Virus record (IMG/VR): IMGVR_UViG_3300042455_001086
Coordinates: 1-64,000 of that record
Strand: one strand, 5' to 3'
DNA length: 64,000 nucleotides
Every line of letters starts with the position of its first letter. Position 1 is the first letter of the stretch. Position numbers and translations under genes: made by a program. This document shows positions 38,524-56,447 of this stretch, piece by piece. Below the pieces are notes generated by a model. The model saw only the letters and a list, made by a program, of their open reading frames with translations, was not told the origin of the DNA and made no database searches.

Positions 38524-38914
38524 GGGGGTGTTTTTGGATTTGACAGGTATTGGCTGAGGAATAAGGGCATGTAGGGACTAAGTTAATCTCTTTAAAAACT
38601 GACTTGGAAAACAACTGGCAATGTGCTAAACAAAATGGAAACTCTTGGATTAGTAAGAGGTTCTGAAGTTACTGTAGCTTAAGATAAGTTCGGAAACGGG
38701 GGGTCGGCAGACATATAACCTAGCAACAGAAGTCGTAGTTTGATAGAGCACACCGGATGGCTCTCTAAATCCGATTCGGGACCATTGGTTGTTGATTTAC
38801 GATGGTGAAGAACAAATCAACTATTTTGGGATATTAGAAAATATCAACCTAAACATGTAGTCCTTATCTGACAGGATATTATGGACCGGAGTTCGACTCT
38901 CCGCACCTCCACCA
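38524..38914 (+). ncRNA. ssrA: tmRNA
   Basis: 5' GGGGGTG..GGATTTGAC; 3' T-arm CGGAGTTCGACTCTCCG and CACCTCCACCA with G3.U70; tag ORF 38617-38682; promoter and boxA upstream. Confidence 0.95.
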
Positions 38915-41910: not shown

Positions 41911-42765
41911 AAAAAGCCTGAGATTACAGCTTGGTTTGAGAACCTTTTGAAGGATTATTTTTTCCCTTCGTATCCACCATCTTTTGAATGGTATTTCTCA
42001 GTGACGGTTTTTTAGGTATACCACTCCTTTAGGTTTGAATTACTCTCATCTTACTTGACTCTTTCCGAGGATGCCTCCCCAGTTCGTCCTTGCGGGATTA
42101 AAGGTTTTTCGGATAATTACACATCGACTTGGGATCTTTGTGTGCAATGAACGGCTCATTACTATGTAGTCACCTTTCATCCAAACCTGACGGACACTTT
42201 TCCTTTCTGTAGTTAATAATAGAATCATTACTTTCCATAAAGTATTTGTGTTGTGGATTGTGAAAGTAGTGGTCCGTCAACCAAGCCAACCCATCTTTTG
42301 AACGGATCGATACTTAACTACTCTCTGAAATGTCCCCATTTCCATATTTTTAGACTACTTCAAAACAATTCCCTTGGTAAGGAATAATTAGGGTTGGTAA
42401 CAGCACCATCTGTACACGAACATACCTTTCGGTTTTAAGTATCCTATTATATTGGAACACGCAATAATAAAATTGGATAATTCTATTTTTTGCAATATTC
42501 CTACGAGTTATTCCTATTGGTGTTCCCACCTCAAACTGACAACCCACATTGCCAGTTCATCTAACCACTTTCCCTACAGCGTTGCCCTCGGTACTAAAGG
42601 TTAAACGGTATCCCGCTTGTGTACTCAAGTTCAGTTACCCAAACCGCAAACCATTTACACGAATGATTCACTTTATCCCACTTTCGTGGTTTATTTTATG
42701 GACTATACACGGCCCAATATCTTTATCAGTTTCATTTCTTACTCCTGAAAGGATAATCTAATTTT
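41911..42765 (-). ncRNA. Large (~850 nt) structured ncRNA, probably GOLLD-class
   Basis: No credible ORF; GC richer than its surroundings; TAACTTTG promoter at 42803-42810 and boxA at 42766-42775; many hairpins; 3' hairpin plus U-run. Size and tRNA-proximal phage context fit GOLLD. Family assignment not verified. Confidence 0.65.
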
Positions 42766-45438: not shown

Positions 45439-45454
45439 AATATATAAATTTTAG

Positions 45455-45570
45455 ATGCCAGGGTGGGATTCGAACCCACATTTAGCAACCTTATAACTTC
45501 TCGCGTCCAAATTGCTCTTGGACCATGGTGTCTTTAGGACTTGGCACCGTGCCGCATTACGCTCCTGACA
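45455..45570 (-). ncRNA. tRNA-like RNA (acceptor and T-arm, non-canonical interior)
   Basis: TGTCAGG/CCTGGCA and GTGGGTTCGAATCCCAC; no standard anticodon arm. Confidence 0.6.
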
Positions 45571-46988: not shown

Positions 46989-47004
46989 ATAACTTTTATT
47001 TTTG

Positions 47005-47079
47005 CCGTCAGGAGTGGATTCGAACCACTTACCGATTCAGATTTGAGTACTGTCCGCTCTGCCATTGAGCTACCTGACT
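47005..47079 (-). ncRNA. Aberrant tRNA, anticodon unresolved
   Basis: Normal D and T arms; 3-bp anticodon stem with a 9-nt loop UACUCAAAU. Confidence 0.55.
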
Positions 47080-47121: not shown

Positions 47122-47331
47122 GTTTTTTTTAAAAATAAAAGGGGGAATTAAGGTGTTACCCCCTTTTTGTTTCTGTCGTTTGAAGTTTCGATTTTAGGTC
47201 TTGGAAACCCCATTCGGTAAAAAAAGAGACCGCAGTTTCTGGAAACTTACCTAACCCCAACATTTCTACCTTGTTACTTTAACGTCTCAACAATGGGACT
47301 CACTTGGGCGAGCATCAAAAAAGACGACCTG

Positions 47332-47417
47332 TAGTCAGGACCGGATTTGAACCGGTATTGTTGAATTACCCAGCTTCAACTGCTTAAGTATAGCGTCTAC
47401 CATTCCGCCACCTGACT
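47332..47417 (-). ncRNA. Leu-type tRNA shell with truncated anticodon arm
   Basis: Acceptor, D and T arms identical to 46380-46480; different interior. Confidence 0.65.
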
Positions 47418-48362: not shown

Positions 48363-48648
48363 GTTTAAGATGAGTCGTGGACTTGTGTACCACTTGTCCC
48401 CCTTTAAGTTTCTCACTAACCCCGGATGTAGGGAAACTCACCTTATTTGTCTTACAAAGATATGTATTTTATTTCAATCTACCAAATCTTTTTTTAATTT
48501 TTGTTGAGGATTAATCCTAAATTTTTTCTTTAAGGCCCTTAATAAATCAGTTTTTATGTTAGTTTTAACAAATTTAACCCTTCCTGATTCACAAGTCCCT
48601 GATAAAACTTCCTTCATCATTCATTGTTTTTAATTGTTTATTTTTTGA

Positions 48649-48725
48649 ACTACCCATAGGACTCGAACCTACAACCTTCGGGCCGAAGTAGACCCGTGTG
48701 CAAACCAAATTTACACCATAAGTAG
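48649..48725 (-). ncRNA. tRNA-like RNA with an 8-nt anticodon loop
   Basis: CGGGT-CTACTTCG-GCCCG; intact D and T arms. Confidence 0.6.
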
Positions 48726-48819
48726 TTACGCAAGAAGACAGACAGGAATTAGTGTCGACAAATTTCCTTAGGCTATATGACCCATCTTCTTGTTAGGTTC
48801 GGTTAATTACTCCGAACTT

Positions 48820-52062: not shown

Positions 52063-52118
52063 CCGGCTTTACCCGTTTCCAACAATCACCTCGTGGCGGT
52101 GGATTAACTCCGATTGTT

Positions 52119-52190
52119 TAGCGTGTTGTGGACTCGAACCACCCCGTAGACGTTATGAGCGTCCCATGCAACCAATTACACCTTCACGCG
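52119..52190 (-). tRNA. tRNA-Met(CAU), initiator-like
   Basis: C1xU72 mismatch; GGACG-CTCATAA-CGTCT; lacks the three consecutive G-C pairs. Confidence 0.75.
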
Positions 52191-52195
52191 ATATG

Positions 52196-55960: not shown

Positions 55961-56034
55961 TGTGTATGATGGGTCACGATCCCATGGCCTCCACTTTCAC
56001 AGAGTGGTACTCTACCAACTGAGCTACATACACC
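55961..56034 (-). tRNA. tRNA-His(GUG)
   Basis: CCACT-CTGTGAA-AGTGG; T-loop AUCGUGA. Confidence 0.87.
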
Positions 56035-56040
56035 ATGTTG

Positions 56041-56108
56041 TCCCGTATGTTGGACTTGAACCAACCTCAAGTCGGATATGAGCCAACTTTGATCCCTGAT
56101 CATACGGG
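56041..56108 (-). tRNA. tRNA(CAU) Met with a minimal D-arm
   Basis: AGTTGG-CTCATAT-CCGACT; D-arm GATC-AGG-GATC. Confidence 0.7.
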
Positions 56109-56114
56109 TTGTTG

Positions 56115-56198
56115 CGGAAGACATTGGAATCGAACCAAATACCCGAAGGTACATCTCGCTTAGCAGGCGGACCCTATCGCCATCAAGGTTTATCTTCC
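56115..56198 (-). tRNA. tRNA-Ser(GCU), 8/4 fold
   Basis: GGAAGATA/TGTCTTCC acceptor; 4-bp T-stem. Confidence 0.82.
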
Positions 56199-56202
56199 GT
56201 AG

Positions 56203-56279
56203 TCGGCACAGTAGGAATCGAACCTACATGGGACCTATTAACCTTTCAACCGCGTATCAGGCGGAGGGTATATGTACCG
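56203..56279 (-). tRNA. D-armless tRNA-Ile(GAU)-like RNA
   Basis: CGGTACA/TGTGCCG acceptor; CCGC-CTGATAC-GCGG only 8 nt after the acceptor; canonical T-arm. Confidence 0.65.
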
Positions 56280-56447
56280 TGGTACGTATTTAGGGGTATT
56301 TCTTAACCACCCCCCTCAGCTCGTCAGCATCTCGGTGGTCGATACTTTAGTCGTGACGAACCCATCTGTCACTTCTTACTAGATTCTTGTGGCTTACTTA
56401 CCTAGGTTTAATCCGTTACCACTACAGGGAGCCCAACATTGTATCTT

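What the first reader, a model, noticed from the sequence alone, without database searches (positions are those of the whole stretch)
56041..56279. D-armless tRNA-Ile(GAU) and minimal-D-arm tRNA(CAU) may be real decoders
Both break the canonical cloverleaf, yet they are the only Ile-GAU and elongator-Met candidates. Leader B contains the matching ATT and internal ATG codons. D-armless tRNAs are mainly known from mitochondria.
Basis: partly seen in the sequence, partly recalled or inferred. Interest (0 to 1): 0.6.

Follow-up and report, generated by a model that had tools for sequence, protein, structure and literature searches.

The report
Phage tRNAs with a rewired D arm
The "D-armless" tRNA-Ile(GAU) is one of a large, almost entirely unannotated family of phage tRNAs whose D-arm pieces are moved to the far side of the anticodon arm but still pair, a tRNA wiring I could not find described anywhere; the neighbouring CAU gene is a conserved tRNA-Met-type gene with a very small D arm.

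Summary
The span 56041-56279 (minus strand) of a 257-kb, 30% GC lake jumbo phage holds three tRNA genes that default tRNA finders miss: CAU (56041-56108), type II Ser-GCU (56114-56198) and GAU (56203-56279).

The GAU gene is real but not D-armless. It belongs to a family of at least 87 distinct sequences in more than 130 viral contigs and 77 cultured Streptomyces phages. The 7-bp acceptor stem, anticodon stem and T stem all covary (97-99% paired). A three-base-pair D' helix joins nt 11-13 to the three nt that follow a GAAA linker after the anticodon arm, and it covaries through all four Watson-Crick types. A D-loop-like AAYUGGU follows.

Swapping the two segments back in silico turns 0/34 ARAGORN detections into 34/34 (Ile-gat, Ile-tat, Met-cat). 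Anticodons are restricted to Ile-box (GAU, UAU, CAU) and Arg (ACG, UCG, UCU, CCU). Synthetase identity elements track the anticodon: A "20" in 31/31 Arg members, U in 51/53 Ile-box members, and A73 in 55/55 Ile-box members. A sister phage has a canonical tRNA-Ile(GAU) in the same slot.

The CAU gene is a conserved, compact-D-arm, elongator-type tRNA. Charging and decoding are inferred, not shown. No prior description was found.

The parts
56203..56279 (-). Rewired-D-arm tRNA-Ile(GAU) gene, 77 nt, no encoded CCA
   Evidence: Rfam tRNA 28.9 bits. Family models R1 and R2 score it 96.8 and 94.4 bits. All helices covary.
56273..56279 (-). Acceptor stem 5' strand CGGUACA, which pairs with 56204-56210; the discriminator A73 is at 56203
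   Evidence: All 7 pairs show compensatory changes and 99% of cells are paired. A73 is present in 55/55 Ile-box members.
56267..56269 (-). D' helix 5' strand ACC (structural equivalent of positions 23-25), preceded by U8 A9 U10 at 56270-56272
   Evidence: It pairs with 56241-56243. All 3 pairs change on both sides. Variants seen: CCC:GGG, CCA:UGG, CGC:GCG, CAC:GUG, CGA:UCG, CUC:GAG, CGG:CCG, AAC:GUU.
56249..56265 (-). Anticodon arm: U.U plus 4 Watson-Crick pairs (CCGC/GCGG) and the loop C-U-GAU-A-C. The anticodon GAU is at 56256-56258.
   Evidence: All 4 pairs covary. U33 and A37 are invariant, and the anticodon is GAU, UAU or CAU when left unconstrained.
56244..56247 (-). GAAA linker between the anticodon arm and the D' 3' strand
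   Evidence: Invariant in the main family. It is replaced by other short linkers in divergent members.
56233..56243 (-). D' helix 3' strand GGU (56241-56243, equivalent to positions 10-12), U40, then the D-loop-like AAUAGGU (equivalent to A14 R15 Y16 N17 G18 G19 U20)
   Evidence: Covaries with 56267-56269. It matches the D loop AAUUGGUA of the canonical Ile(GAU) in L002. The base after GG tracks isotype.
56211..56227 (-). T arm: GUAGG-UUCGAUU-CCUAC
   Evidence: 4 of its 5 pairs covary, and the G53:C61 pair and the T-loop consensus are conserved.
56114..56198 (-). Type II tRNA-Ser(GCU), below default thresholds
   Evidence: Found by ARAGORN -ps and -mt. Rfam tRNA-Sec model gives 30.9 bits. It is 98.8% identical in L002 and 95% in L007, and its L013 counterpart is called Ser(gct) by default ARAGORN.
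56041..56108 (-). Compact-D-arm tRNA(CAU), elongator type, most likely Met. The D hairpin GAUC-AGG-GAUC is at 56091-56101, the AAA connector at 56088-56090 and the anticodon CAU at 56078-56080.
   Evidence: Found only by ARAGORN -mt. It is conserved in 13 contigs with CAU invariant when the anticodon is left unconstrained. The sister variant GUUC-UAGGU-GAAC is called tRNA-Met by default ARAGORN in L002. C1:G72 is paired and A73 is present.
56280..56447 (-). 168-nt conserved element of unknown nature, immediately upstream of the GAU gene (context, not shown to belong to it)
   Evidence: 86-96% identical over its full length in six related loci. No Rfam hit. Too little variation to test a structure.

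Best explanation
The span is part of a minus-strand tRNA array in a jumbo phage. The GAU gene encodes a tRNA-Ile in which two adjacent internal segments have traded places compared with the standard cloverleaf. The segments are the D-stem 5' strand plus D loop (positions 10-20) and the D-stem 3' strand plus anticodon arm (positions 22-44).

The order along the RNA is: acceptor 5' strand, U8-A9, N-ACC (acting as 22-25), C (26), anticodon arm, N-GAAA linker, GGU-U (acting as 10-13), AAYUGGU (acting as D loop 14-20), NNCAY (variable-like), T arm, acceptor 3' strand, A73. ACC pairs with GGU, so a D stem forms around the base of the anticodon arm and can stack on it as usual. The relocated GG can contact the T loop.

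The expected result is a normal L shape built from a three-way junction. After RNase P/RNase Z-type processing and CCA addition (the phage has a CCA-adding enzyme homologue), the host IleRS charges it, since the phage has no IleRS. It then reads AUU/AUC. AUU is among the phage's most-used codons, and the phage has no other GAU tRNA.

The CAU gene is an elongator-type tRNA, most likely Met, with a minimal D hairpin of a 4-bp stem and a 3-nt loop that includes GG.

Shown here: all helices, the family, the anticodon restriction, the identity-element correlation, and the synteny with canonical genes. Inferred: the 3D fold, processing, charging and decoding.
For: Existence and structure:
- The family was recovered with an anticodon-free pattern in 61 contigs. 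A second pattern that left the anticodon, D' helix, linker and position 20 free found more than 120.
- The three classical helices are 98.7% paired, with 15/16 pairs compensatory.
- The D' helix has 3/3 pairs with changes on both sides, and 97% and 95% (independent set; central pair GC 21, CG 17, UA 7, AU 6) of cells paired. Slid controls give 32-52%.

Segment swap:
- Cutting and pasting the two segments back, with no base changed, raises ARAGORN default detection from 0/34 to 34/34 (Ile-gat 22, Ile-tat 9, Met-cat 3).
- Controls gave 0/34, 0/34, 9/34 and 12/34.
- The relocated loop equals the D loop of the canonical Ile(GAU) in L002.

Function:
- Anticodons are limited to GAU 35, UAU 14, CAU 4 and Arg ACG 7, UCG 4, UCU 18, CCU 2.
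- GAU and UAU copies occur in tandem in single phages.
- The base after the relocated GG is A in 31/31 Arg members and U in 51/53 Ile-box members. The discriminator is A in 55/55 Ile-box members.
- These match the bacterial ArgRS (A20, C35) and IleRS (A73, U12-A23, U20, C29-G41) identity sets in PMC9976931.
- Sister phage L002 (neighbour protein 98% identical) has a canonical Ile(GAU) and an ARAGORN-default Met(CAU) in the same Asn-X-Ser-Y-His slots, with the same CUAC spacer.
- ATT occurs at 43.9 per 1000 codons, and there is no other GAU tRNA in G000.
- G000 has no class-I Ile/Leu/Val/Met-type synthetase and no TilS, but it does have a CCA-adding enzyme homologue.
- RNA-library contigs cover the CAU, Ser and GAU genes.

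CAU gene:
- It is found in 13 contigs with CAU invariant.
- Its two D-stem variants, GAUC/GAUC and GUUC/GAAC, differ by a compensatory swap.
Against: - There is no direct evidence of a mature RNA, CCA addition, charging, EF-Tu binding or decoding. The RNA-library evidence consists of assembled contigs, which cannot show ends and could include DNA carry-over.
- The 3D equivalence to an L shape is an inference from connectivity and conserved bases. No RNA 3D modelling was available.
- The anticodon stem has only 4 Watson-Crick pairs plus a conserved U.U.
- The A20/isotype association rests on few independent switches: about 5 on the best tree and at least 2 on supported branches. The sign test has no power, and the Fisher value of 5.6e-21 ignores relatedness.
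- Some phages, such as Mildred21, carry canonical Ile(gat) and Ile(tat) as well. 9 of 53 loci with a rewired GAU also showed a canonical gat in the fetched stretch. The rewired copy is therefore not always the sole decoder.
- The CAU family is a shallow clade with little variation, so the evidence for selection on it is much weaker. Met versus lysidine-modified Ile2 cannot be decided from sequence.
Confidence: 0.75

Rival explanations
1. The GAU gene is a tRNA-like RNA that is not used in translation. It might be a decoy or sponge for host tRNA-targeting nucleases or modification enzymes, a regulatory RNA, or a processing signal within the array.
For: It fails tRNA gene finders. It coexists with canonical Ile(gat) in some phages. 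No charging data exist. In Streptomyces phages it lies beside a tRNA nucleotidyltransferase gene rather than inside the main tRNA block.
Against: A decoy would not need wobble-position diversity (GAU, UAU and CAU, including tandem GAU+UAU sets), nor switches to all four Arg anticodons accompanied by the ArgRS determinant A20, nor an invariant A73 in Ile-box members. In this phage it fills the slot of a canonical Ile(GAU) and is the only GAU gene in a genome rich in ATT. A decoy for synthetase-like recognition could mimic identity elements, so this rival is weakened rather than excluded.
Confidence: 0.12
2. It is a truly D-armless, mitochondrion-like tRNA with a long unstructured extra region.
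For: No hairpin lies between the acceptor and anticodon stems. The Rfam alignment shows 4 nt in place of the 15-nt D arm and an insertion of about 18 nt.
Against: The 'extra region' is the most conserved part of the molecule. Its first three bases after GAAA covary with nt 11-13 through all four Watson-Crick types. The G18-G19-like GG and the full T-loop consensus are kept, unlike in mitochondrial D-armless tRNAs (PMC7609411). Swapping the segments restores a canonical cloverleaf in 34/34 members.
Confidence: 0.03
3. It is a tRNA-Leu(UAA), with the UUAA of GGUUAAY as the anticodon loop. This is how GenBank annotates the EGole homologue.
For: The EGole record labels the same 77-nt gene 'tRNA-Leu, codon UUA'. 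TTA is very frequent in this phage (42.5 per 1000). Neither ARAGORN on G000 nor the Mildred21 annotation lists a clear Leu(UAA).
Against: No stem closes that loop. Position 37 would be a pyrimidine in most members. U33 would be G in the CCC:GGG, CCA:UGG, CGC:GCG and CAC:GUG variants, because that base covaries as part of the D' helix. There is no long variable arm as in bacterial tRNA-Leu. Under this reading the 'anticodon' would stay UAA (or UAG) across members that carry both Ile and Arg identity elements. The window's 'Leu(aag)' gene at 47331-47417 can be read as C-U-UAA-G-C.
Confidence: 0.02
4. One or both genes are decaying pseudogenes of ordinary tRNAs in a fast-evolving array.
For: Both score below the thresholds of standard tools. 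The array holds other degenerate-looking genes. The CAU family shows little diversity, so selection on it is weakly documented.
Against: GAU gene: 97-99% of cells are paired across at least 87 distinct sequences with compensatory changes everywhere. CAU gene: it is nearly invariant across 13 contigs whose spacers differ, it has a compensatory D-stem swap between variants, and the acceptor, anticodon and T stems are intact.
Confidence: 0.05
5. The transcript is rearranged after transcription, by cutting and re-ligation, into a canonical tRNA order.
For: These phages encode RNA ligase and other RNA repair-type enzymes (Mildred21 annotation). Permuted tRNA genes processed through circular intermediates are known in a red alga (own knowledge).
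Against: The acceptor 5' and 3' strands are already at the gene ends, so circularisation and re-opening cannot produce the swap. It would need three precise cuts and two or more ligations. The D' helix and the GAAA linker are under selection in the native order.
Confidence: 0.02

Closest known systems
Canonical bacterial or phage tRNA-Ile(GAU), for example the gene in the same array slot of the sister phage (L002:9140-9213)
   Same: 7/5 acceptor/T architecture, A73, anticodon loop CUGAUAC, T-loop consensus, D-loop sequence AAUUGGU, G10:C25-like and U12:A23-like pairs, and the same position in the array.
   Different: The order of segments. The D-stem 3' strand and anticodon arm come before the D-stem 5' strand and D loop. 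This gives a three-way junction instead of a four-way one, adds a GAAA linker, and leaves an anticodon stem of 4 Watson-Crick pairs plus U.U.
Mitochondrial D-armless tRNAs (mammalian mt-tRNA-Ser(AGY), nematode mt-tRNAs; PMC7609411)
   Same: No hairpin between the acceptor and anticodon stems, and standard gene finders miss them.
   Different: The mitochondrial forms have lost the D stem, G18-G19 and often the T-loop consensus, and they rely on flexibility and adapted factors. This family keeps all of those elements with new connectivity, is viral, and must work with ordinary bacterial machinery.
Circularly permuted tRNA genes of Cyanidioschyzon merolae (own knowledge, not checked here)
   Same: The gene order of tRNA segments differs from the cloverleaf order.
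   Different: In those genes the whole molecule is permuted (3' half before 5' half), and processing restores a canonical mature tRNA. Here the ends are normal, an internal pair of segments is transposed, and the mature RNA is expected to keep that order.
allo-tRNAs and (8/4) or (9/3) tRNAs of bacteria and phages (PMC5389517)
   Same: Non-canonical tRNA classes found by metagenome mining, some of them in phage tRNA clusters.
   Different: Those alter the lengths of the acceptor and T stems and have long variable arms and Sec-like D arms in the usual place. This family is 7/5 with a relocated D arm.
tRNA-Sec and reduced-D-loop mitochondrial tRNAs (comparison for the CAU gene)
   Same: A very small D loop on a regular D stem (tRNA-Sec has a 4-nt loop; here it is 3-5 nt).
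   Different: The CAU gene has a 4-bp stem that abuts the acceptor stem with no clear 8-9 connector and a 3-nt AAA connector to the anticodon stem. It has a normal 7/5 acceptor/T branch and no long variable arm.

Membership tests
Canonical cloverleaf tRNA (Rfam RF00005) | 7-bp acceptor stem with an unpaired discriminator, and a 5-bp T stem with a GTTCRANYC-type loop | tested here: met
   All 7 acceptor pairs and 4 of 5 T-stem pairs covary, with 96-99% of cells paired. The CAU gene has a perfect 7-bp acceptor stem and 5-bp T stem.
Canonical cloverleaf tRNA (Rfam RF00005) | Anticodon hairpin with a 7-nt loop, U33 and a purine at 37 | tested here: met
   The loop is C-U-NNN-A-H on a covarying stem of 4 Watson-Crick pairs plus U.U in the GAU family. 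The CAU gene has a 5-bp stem and the loop CUCAUAU.
Canonical cloverleaf tRNA (Rfam RF00005) | D hairpin located between nt 9 and nt 26 | tested here: not met
   GAU gene: only UACC-C lies there. CAU gene: a hairpin is present but reduced to 11 nt with a 3-nt loop.
Canonical cloverleaf tRNA (Rfam RF00005) | Score at or above the family's gathering threshold (29 bits) | tested here: not met
   GAU gene: 28.9 bits. CAU gene: no tRNA hit at E<=10. Neither appears in the gathering-threshold scan.
Functional tRNA (any kind) | Mature, CCA-ended, aminoacylated RNA that decodes on the ribosome | not testable with these tools
   Only contigs from RNA libraries cover the genes. Identity elements are consistent with charging.
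Mitochondrial-type D-armless tRNA | D stem and D loop elements absent and replaced by a short connector, with the G18G19/T-loop interaction motifs lost | tested here: not met
   The D' helix covaries. GG, the A14-like A and the T-loop consensus are invariant or nearly so. The swap-back restores a cloverleaf.
Circularly permuted tRNA gene | The 3' half is encoded upstream of the 5' half, with the acceptor termini internal to the gene | tested here: not met
   The acceptor 5' and 3' strands are at the two ends of the 77-nt gene in all members.
allo-tRNA / (8/4), (9/3) tRNAs | 12-bp acceptor branch divided 8/4 or 9/3, with a long variable arm | tested here: not met
   The branch is 7/5 throughout. 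The extra region is not a hairpin arm.
Bacterial IleRS substrate (tRNA-Ile identity set, PMC9976931) | A73; G or C at 34, A35, U36, A37; U12-A23; U20; C29-G41; C4-G69 | tested here: inconclusive
   The window gene has A73, GAU, A37, U39:A11 (equivalent to U12:A23 under the swap mapping), U after GG (equivalent to U20) and C17:G29 (equivalent to C29:G41). It has U4.G69, where close relatives have C4:G69, and C38 rather than A38. The mapping of positions is an inference, and charging was not tested.
Bacterial elongator tRNA-Met (for the CAU gene) | Anticodon CAU with C32, U33 and A37; A73; 1:72 paired; no run of three G:C pairs in the anticodon stem | tested here: met
   The loop is CUCAUAU, A73 is present, C1:G72 is paired, and the anticodon stem is GUUGG/CCGAC. 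The acceptor-stem determinants U4-A69 and A5-U68 are not present. Lysidine-dependent Ile2 identity cannot be excluded from sequence, and the phage has no TilS.

The most novel reading that the evidence does not exclude
Rewired-D-arm tRNAs are fully functional Ile and Arg decoders, and the rewiring is adaptive. By changing strand connectivity in the core while keeping synthetase identity elements, phages would obtain tRNAs that their hosts' tRNA-targeting defences or D-arm-dependent enzymes no longer recognise or cleave. Those tRNAs would be a privileged supply for Ile and Arg codons during infection. This would also be the first natural demonstration that the tRNA L shape can be built from a different backbone topology and still serve bacterial synthetases, EF-Tu and ribosomes.
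Probability: 0.15. Interest if true: 0.92.

Novelty: new variant of a known kind. Interest (0 to 1): 0.85.

Why it matters
The cloverleaf order of arms is treated as a near-universal invariant of tRNA, with known exceptions that lose or resize arms. A widespread family that keeps every arm but connects them in a different order would be a new structural class. If it is charged and decodes, it shows that bacterial synthetases, processing enzymes, EF-Tu and the ribosome read the three-dimensional arrangement rather than the backbone path.

Practical consequences:
- tRNA inventories of phages are undercounted. 76 of 77 Streptomyces BE-cluster records leave this gene unannotated and one mislabels it as Leu. 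That affects codon-usage and host-dependence analyses.
- A covariance model such as the R2 built here would find these genes.
- The scaffold offers a natural template for orthogonal or engineered tRNAs.
- Because cultured Streptomyces phages carry the gene, the question is directly testable at the bench.

Tried and rejected
- ARAGORN in default, lowered-threshold, intron and mitochondrial modes never finds the GAU gene. Mitochondrial mode finds the CAU gene, but it makes about 60 calls outside the array across the genome, so that call alone is worth little.
- The Rfam permissive scan gave a sub-threshold tRNA hit for the GAU gene, a tRNA-Sec hit for what is really Ser(GCU), and a chance-level YrlA hit (E 2.3).
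- RNAfold's own D'-like helix (13-15 with 36-38) is in the wrong register. The L103 and L104 variants break it.
- MAFFT misaligned the linker of the most divergent members, so I used covariance-model alignments and an independent parser.
- My first parser miscalled position 20 where the sequence begins TAGAAAGG. This was corrected.
- The inventory argument for Ile versus Leu in Mildred21 was inconclusive: it has canonical Ile(gat) and lacks Leu(taa).
- Phage-encoded IleRS and TilS were searched for and not found.
- The tree-based test of the A20/isotype association had too few independent switches to be significant.
- Folding the alignment of the 168-nt upstream element gave only one compensatory pair.
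- Seven literature searches and two reviews gave no prior description. The library holds open-access papers and bioRxiv only, so absence there is not proof.
- Not attempted: RNA 3D modelling (no tool), the metagenome-contig scan, protein structure tools and complex prediction (not relevant here).
Full report
**Context.** The window is the first 64 kb of a complete 257,166-bp IMG/VR virus record with inverted terminal repeats. Its GC content is 30%. It recurs in lake-water metagenomes from 16 studies. All of its tRNA genes lie on the minus strand between 45454 and 61069, next to a GOLLD RNA and a tmRNA. Default ARAGORN and Rfam at gathering thresholds leave a hole at 56034-56447, between tRNA-His and tRNA-Asn.

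**What is in the span.** Read on the minus strand, the finding's coordinates hold three tRNA-like genes separated by 4-5 nt spacers:

| Gene | Coordinates | Detection |
|---|---|---|
| CAU gene | 56041-56108 | ARAGORN mitochondrial mode only; that mode makes about 60 calls outside the array in this genome |
| Type II Ser(GCU) | 56114-56198 | ARAGORN at lowered threshold; Rfam tRNA-Sec model, 30.9 bits |
| GAU gene | 56203-56279 | Rfam tRNA 28.9 bits against a cut-off of 29, with the 15-nt D arm replaced by 4 nt and an insertion of about 18 nt after the anticodon arm |

The next question was whether these genes are more than debris.

**The GAU gene belongs to a large family.**
- A search of IMG/VR with the anticodon arm found 11 contigs in which the acceptor and T stems differ by compensatory changes.
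- To avoid circularity I searched with only the non-anticodon core, TATACC-N17-21-GAAAGGTTAAYWGGT. It hit 61 contigs, always with 19 nt between the anchors. These gave 33 distinct genes, nearly all exactly 77 nt, with fully paired acceptor stems and an A discriminator.
- On that alignment 98.7% of cells pair, against 64% in shuffles and 34-52% in slid controls. 15 of 16 pairs show changes on both sides.
- Among 185,579 species genomes the pattern occurs 5 times. Three of those are MAG contigs of 19-163 kb. The Paenibacillus chromosome hit scores only 18 bits with the model and looks like chance.
- It also occurs in 77 cultured Streptomyces phages (Stanwilliamsviridae, BE cluster). It is unannotated in 76 of them, and one record labels it 'tRNA-Leu, codon UUA'. 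The Mildred21 copy scores 94.7 bits with my model.

**It is not D-armless.**
- A covariance model of the family (R1) separated family members (77-101 bits) from ordinary tRNAs (28 bits or less). It also exposed a tier of divergent members.
- In the main family U8-A9 is followed by U-ACC, and the anticodon arm is followed by N-GAAA-GGU-U. In the divergent members ACC:GGU becomes CCC:GGG, CCA:UGG, CGC:GCG, CAC:GUG, CGA:UCG or AUG:CAU. Later sets add CUC:GAG, CGG:CCG and AAC:GUU.
- Formal counts support this. On A4, 3/3 pairs change on both sides, none changes on one side only, and 97% of cells are paired.
- On an independent and more diverse set, A7, the pairs appear as CG 33/UA 8/AU 6/GC 2, GC 21/CG 17/UA 7/AU 6 and CG 23/GC 13. 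95% of cells are paired, against 43-48% in slid controls.
- RNAfold alone picks a shifted register that the CCA:UGG and CGC:GCG variants break.

So a D stem exists. It is formed by a strand before the anticodon arm and a strand after it.

The sequence that follows, A-A-Y-U-G-G-U, is the D-loop consensus A14 R15 Y16 Y17 G18 G19 U20. It matches the D loop (AAUUGGUA) of the canonical tRNA-Ile(GAU) in the sister phage.

The simplest description is a transposition of two adjacent segments. The canonical order is 8-9, [10-20/21], [22-44], 45-48. This family's order is 8-9, [22-44], linker, [10-20], 45-48-like.

Under this mapping the conserved pairs are G10:C25 and U12:A23, and U8, A14, G18G19, the T-loop consensus, G53:C61 and A58 are all retained.

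By inference from the known tRNA fold, the three altered backbone joins connect residues that are neighbours in the L shape. The strand 39-44 already stacks onto 10-13, and U8/A9 lie beside 21/22. An ordinary L built on a three-way junction is therefore plausible. No 3D tool was available to test this.

**A direct test of the swap.** I cut the two segments out of each of 34 members and pasted them back in canonical order, changing no base.

| Arrangement | ARAGORN default detections (of 34) |
|---|---|
| Native order | 0 |
| Swapped back | 34: Ile(gat) 22, Ile(tat) 9, Met(cat) 3 |
| Relocated segment deleted | 0 |
| Relocated segment placed elsewhere | 0 |
| Relocated segment reversed | 9 |
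| Relocated segment shuffled | 12 |

**Is the anticodon an anticodon?**
- With the anticodon arm unconstrained, the first family reads only GAU, UAU or CAU. U33 and A37 are invariant.
- Several phages carry GAU and UAU copies in tandem.
The model, plus a parser that does not rely on it, recovered 87 distinct rewired genes.

| Group | Anticodons (count) |
|---|---|
| Ile box | GAU 35, UAU 14, CAU 4 |
| Arg | ACG 7, UCG 4, UCU 18, CCU 2 |
| Doubtful | one parse reading AAA |

The four Arg anticodons span both arginine codon boxes, which share only the amino acid.

The base after the relocated GG was unconstrained by the search. It is A in 31/31 Arg members and U in 51/53 Ile-box members. The discriminator is A in 55/55 Ile-box members and G, A or U in Arg members.

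These are the bacterial identity sets listed in PMC9976931: Arg needs A20 (the main ArgRS determinant), C35, U/G36 and A/G/U73. Ile needs A73, U12-A23, U20, C29-G41, G/C34, A35, U36 and A37.

The window gene has A73, GAU, A37, U39:A11 (equivalent to U12:A23), U at '20' and C17:G29 (equivalent to C29:G41). It has U4.G69, where close relatives have C4:G69.

One caveat applies. A tree built without the anticodon and position-20 columns implies only about 5 Ile/Arg switches, at least 2 of them on supported branches. Formal support for the association is therefore weak, and the Fisher value of 5.6e-21 ignores relatedness. Its weight comes from agreement with known biochemistry.

**Synteny and demand.**
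- The closest relative, L002, has a neighbouring protein 98% identical to the window's. It keeps the order Asn - X - Ser(GCU) - Y - His. There X is a canonical tRNA-Ile(GAU), Y is a tRNA-Met(CAU) that default ARAGORN accepts, and the same CUAC spacer precedes Ser.
- The window's GAU gene is not derived from that canonical gene. It is 97-99% identical to family members in other contigs, so the slot was refilled by transfer.
- G000 has no other GAU tRNA.
- ATT is the most used of the codons I tabulated (43.9 per 1000).
- The phage has no class-I Ile/Leu/Val/Met-type synthetase and no TilS, but it does have a CCA-adding enzyme homologue at 113693-114115. Charging would have to be done by the host IleRS.
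- Contigs assembled from four metatranscriptome libraries cover the CAU and Ser genes (56069-56203, no differences) and the whole GAU gene (56163-56281, two differences). This is consistent with transcription but is not proof, and it says nothing about the RNA ends.

**The rival 'tRNA-Leu(UAA)' reading.** The EGole annotation would place the anticodon in GGUUAAY. I reject it for these reasons:
- No stem closes that loop.
- Position 37 would be a pyrimidine.
- 'U33' is the base that covaries with nt 11 and becomes G in several variants.
- The supposed anticodon would stay constant across members with Ile and Arg identity elements.

The inventory argument is neutral. Mildred21 has canonical Ile(gat) and no Leu(taa), and the window's 'Leu(aag)' can be read as Leu(UAA).

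**The CAU gene.**
- It has a perfect 7-bp acceptor stem (C1:G72 paired), A73, the anticodon arm GUUGG-CUCAUAU-CCGAC, a 5-nt variable loop and a regular T arm. Only 14 nt lie between the acceptor and anticodon stems: GAUC-AGG-GAUC-AAA.
- A search anchored on the acceptor, D stem and T arm, with the anticodon left free, found it in 13 contigs. All have CAU. The gene is nearly invariant while the downstream spacers differ.
- A second variant, GUUC-UAGGU-GAAC, differs in the D stem by a compensatory U:A to A:U swap. It is the form that ARAGORN calls tRNA-Met in L002.
- The other CAU gene in the genome, at 52118-52193, shares a C1xU72 mismatch with L002's second Met gene and looks initiator-like. 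The 56041 gene is therefore the elongator-type candidate.
- The genome has a canonical Ile(UAU) for AUA codons and no TilS. Met is therefore more likely than lysidine-dependent Ile2, but sequence cannot decide this.
- This clade is shallow, so the evidence for function is clearly weaker than for the GAU family.

**What is known.** The 2020 review of non-canonical tRNAs lists D-arm loss only for mitochondrial tRNAs. It mentions no phage case and no permuted arm order. The paper on 8/4 and 9/3 tRNAs concerns the acceptor/T branch. BE-cluster genome announcements only count tRNAs. Other searches found nothing. Rfam 15 has no family for it. The library is limited to open-access papers and preprints, so I cannot exclude a description elsewhere.

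**Verdict.** The structural label is wrong in an interesting way.

The GAU gene represents a widespread phage tRNA class for Ile and Arg with a transposed, still-paired D arm.

| Claim | Confidence |
|---|---|
| Structured, selected gene with this topology | above 0.9 |
| Charged with Ile and decodes AUY | about 0.75 |

I rate it a new variant of a known kind, with high interest. It challenges the assumed invariance of arm order, it is hidden in cultured phage genomes, and it is directly testable.

Noticed in passing
window 56280-56447 (minus strand): A 168-nt element lies between tRNA-Asn and the rewired GAU gene. It is conserved end to end (86-96%) in six related loci, ends in ...ACCA directly before the tRNA, has no Rfam match and no ORF, and shows too little variation to test a fold. 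The sister phage L002 lacks it along with the rewired gene.
   Followed up: partly
L019:7912-7987, L028:5066-5139, L174, L124, L128, L180, L140, L176 and others: The same rewired scaffold is used for tRNA-Arg with anticodons ACG, UCG, UCU and CCU in other phages. All 31 have A at the base after the relocated GG, the ArgRS determinant A20. Some phages carry rewired Ile and Arg genes together.
   Followed up: yes
GenBank MK494112.1 75265-75341 (L116), MF155946.1 73703-73779 (L115), and 75 other Streptomyces phage records: Cultured BE-cluster Streptomyces phages carry the rewired GAU gene beside a tRNA nucleotidyltransferase gene. 76 of the 77 records leave it unannotated. EGole labels it tRNA-Leu (codon UUA), which the covariation contradicts.
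   Followed up: yes
window 56114-56198 (minus strand): A type II tRNA-Ser(GCU) sits between the two genes of the finding. It falls below the default ARAGORN and Rfam thresholds, and its best Rfam match is the tRNA-Sec model at 30.9 bits. It is conserved in L002, L007 and L013.
   Followed up: partly
window 52118-52193 (minus strand): A second CAU gene has C1xU72 and A7xA66 mismatches in the acceptor stem. It is homologous to a tRNA-Met in L002 that also has the 1:72 mismatch. It is initiator-like but lacks the three G:C pairs in the anticodon stem.
   Followed up: partly
window 48647-48726, 47004-47079, 47331-47417, 45454-45546 (minus strand): ARAGORN makes other odd calls in the array: a tRNA with a 4-base anticodon ACUU, a 'Ser(ACU)' with a poor anticodon stem, a 'Leu(AAG)' whose loop can be read C-U-UAA-G-C, and a 93-nt Cys(GCA) with a long extra arm.
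   Followed up: no
window 41915-42325 (-) and 38524-38914 (+): A full-length GOLLD RNA (321.6 bits) and a tmRNA (110.2 bits) lie just outside the tRNA array.
   Followed up: no
G000:C1:113693-114115 (minus strand; outside the window): The phage encodes a CCA-adding enzyme homologue (PolyA_pol domain, 67 bits) but no Ile/Leu/Val/Met-type synthetase and no TilS. None of the three genes in the span encodes CCA.
   Followed up: partly
window 56203 joined to 56341 in an RNA-library contig (run X18): One contig from a freshwater transcriptome library joins the Ser gene directly to the middle of the 168-nt element, skipping the GAU gene. Other contigs run from the GAU gene into a different upstream tRNA. 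The array composition therefore varies among close relatives.
   Followed up: no
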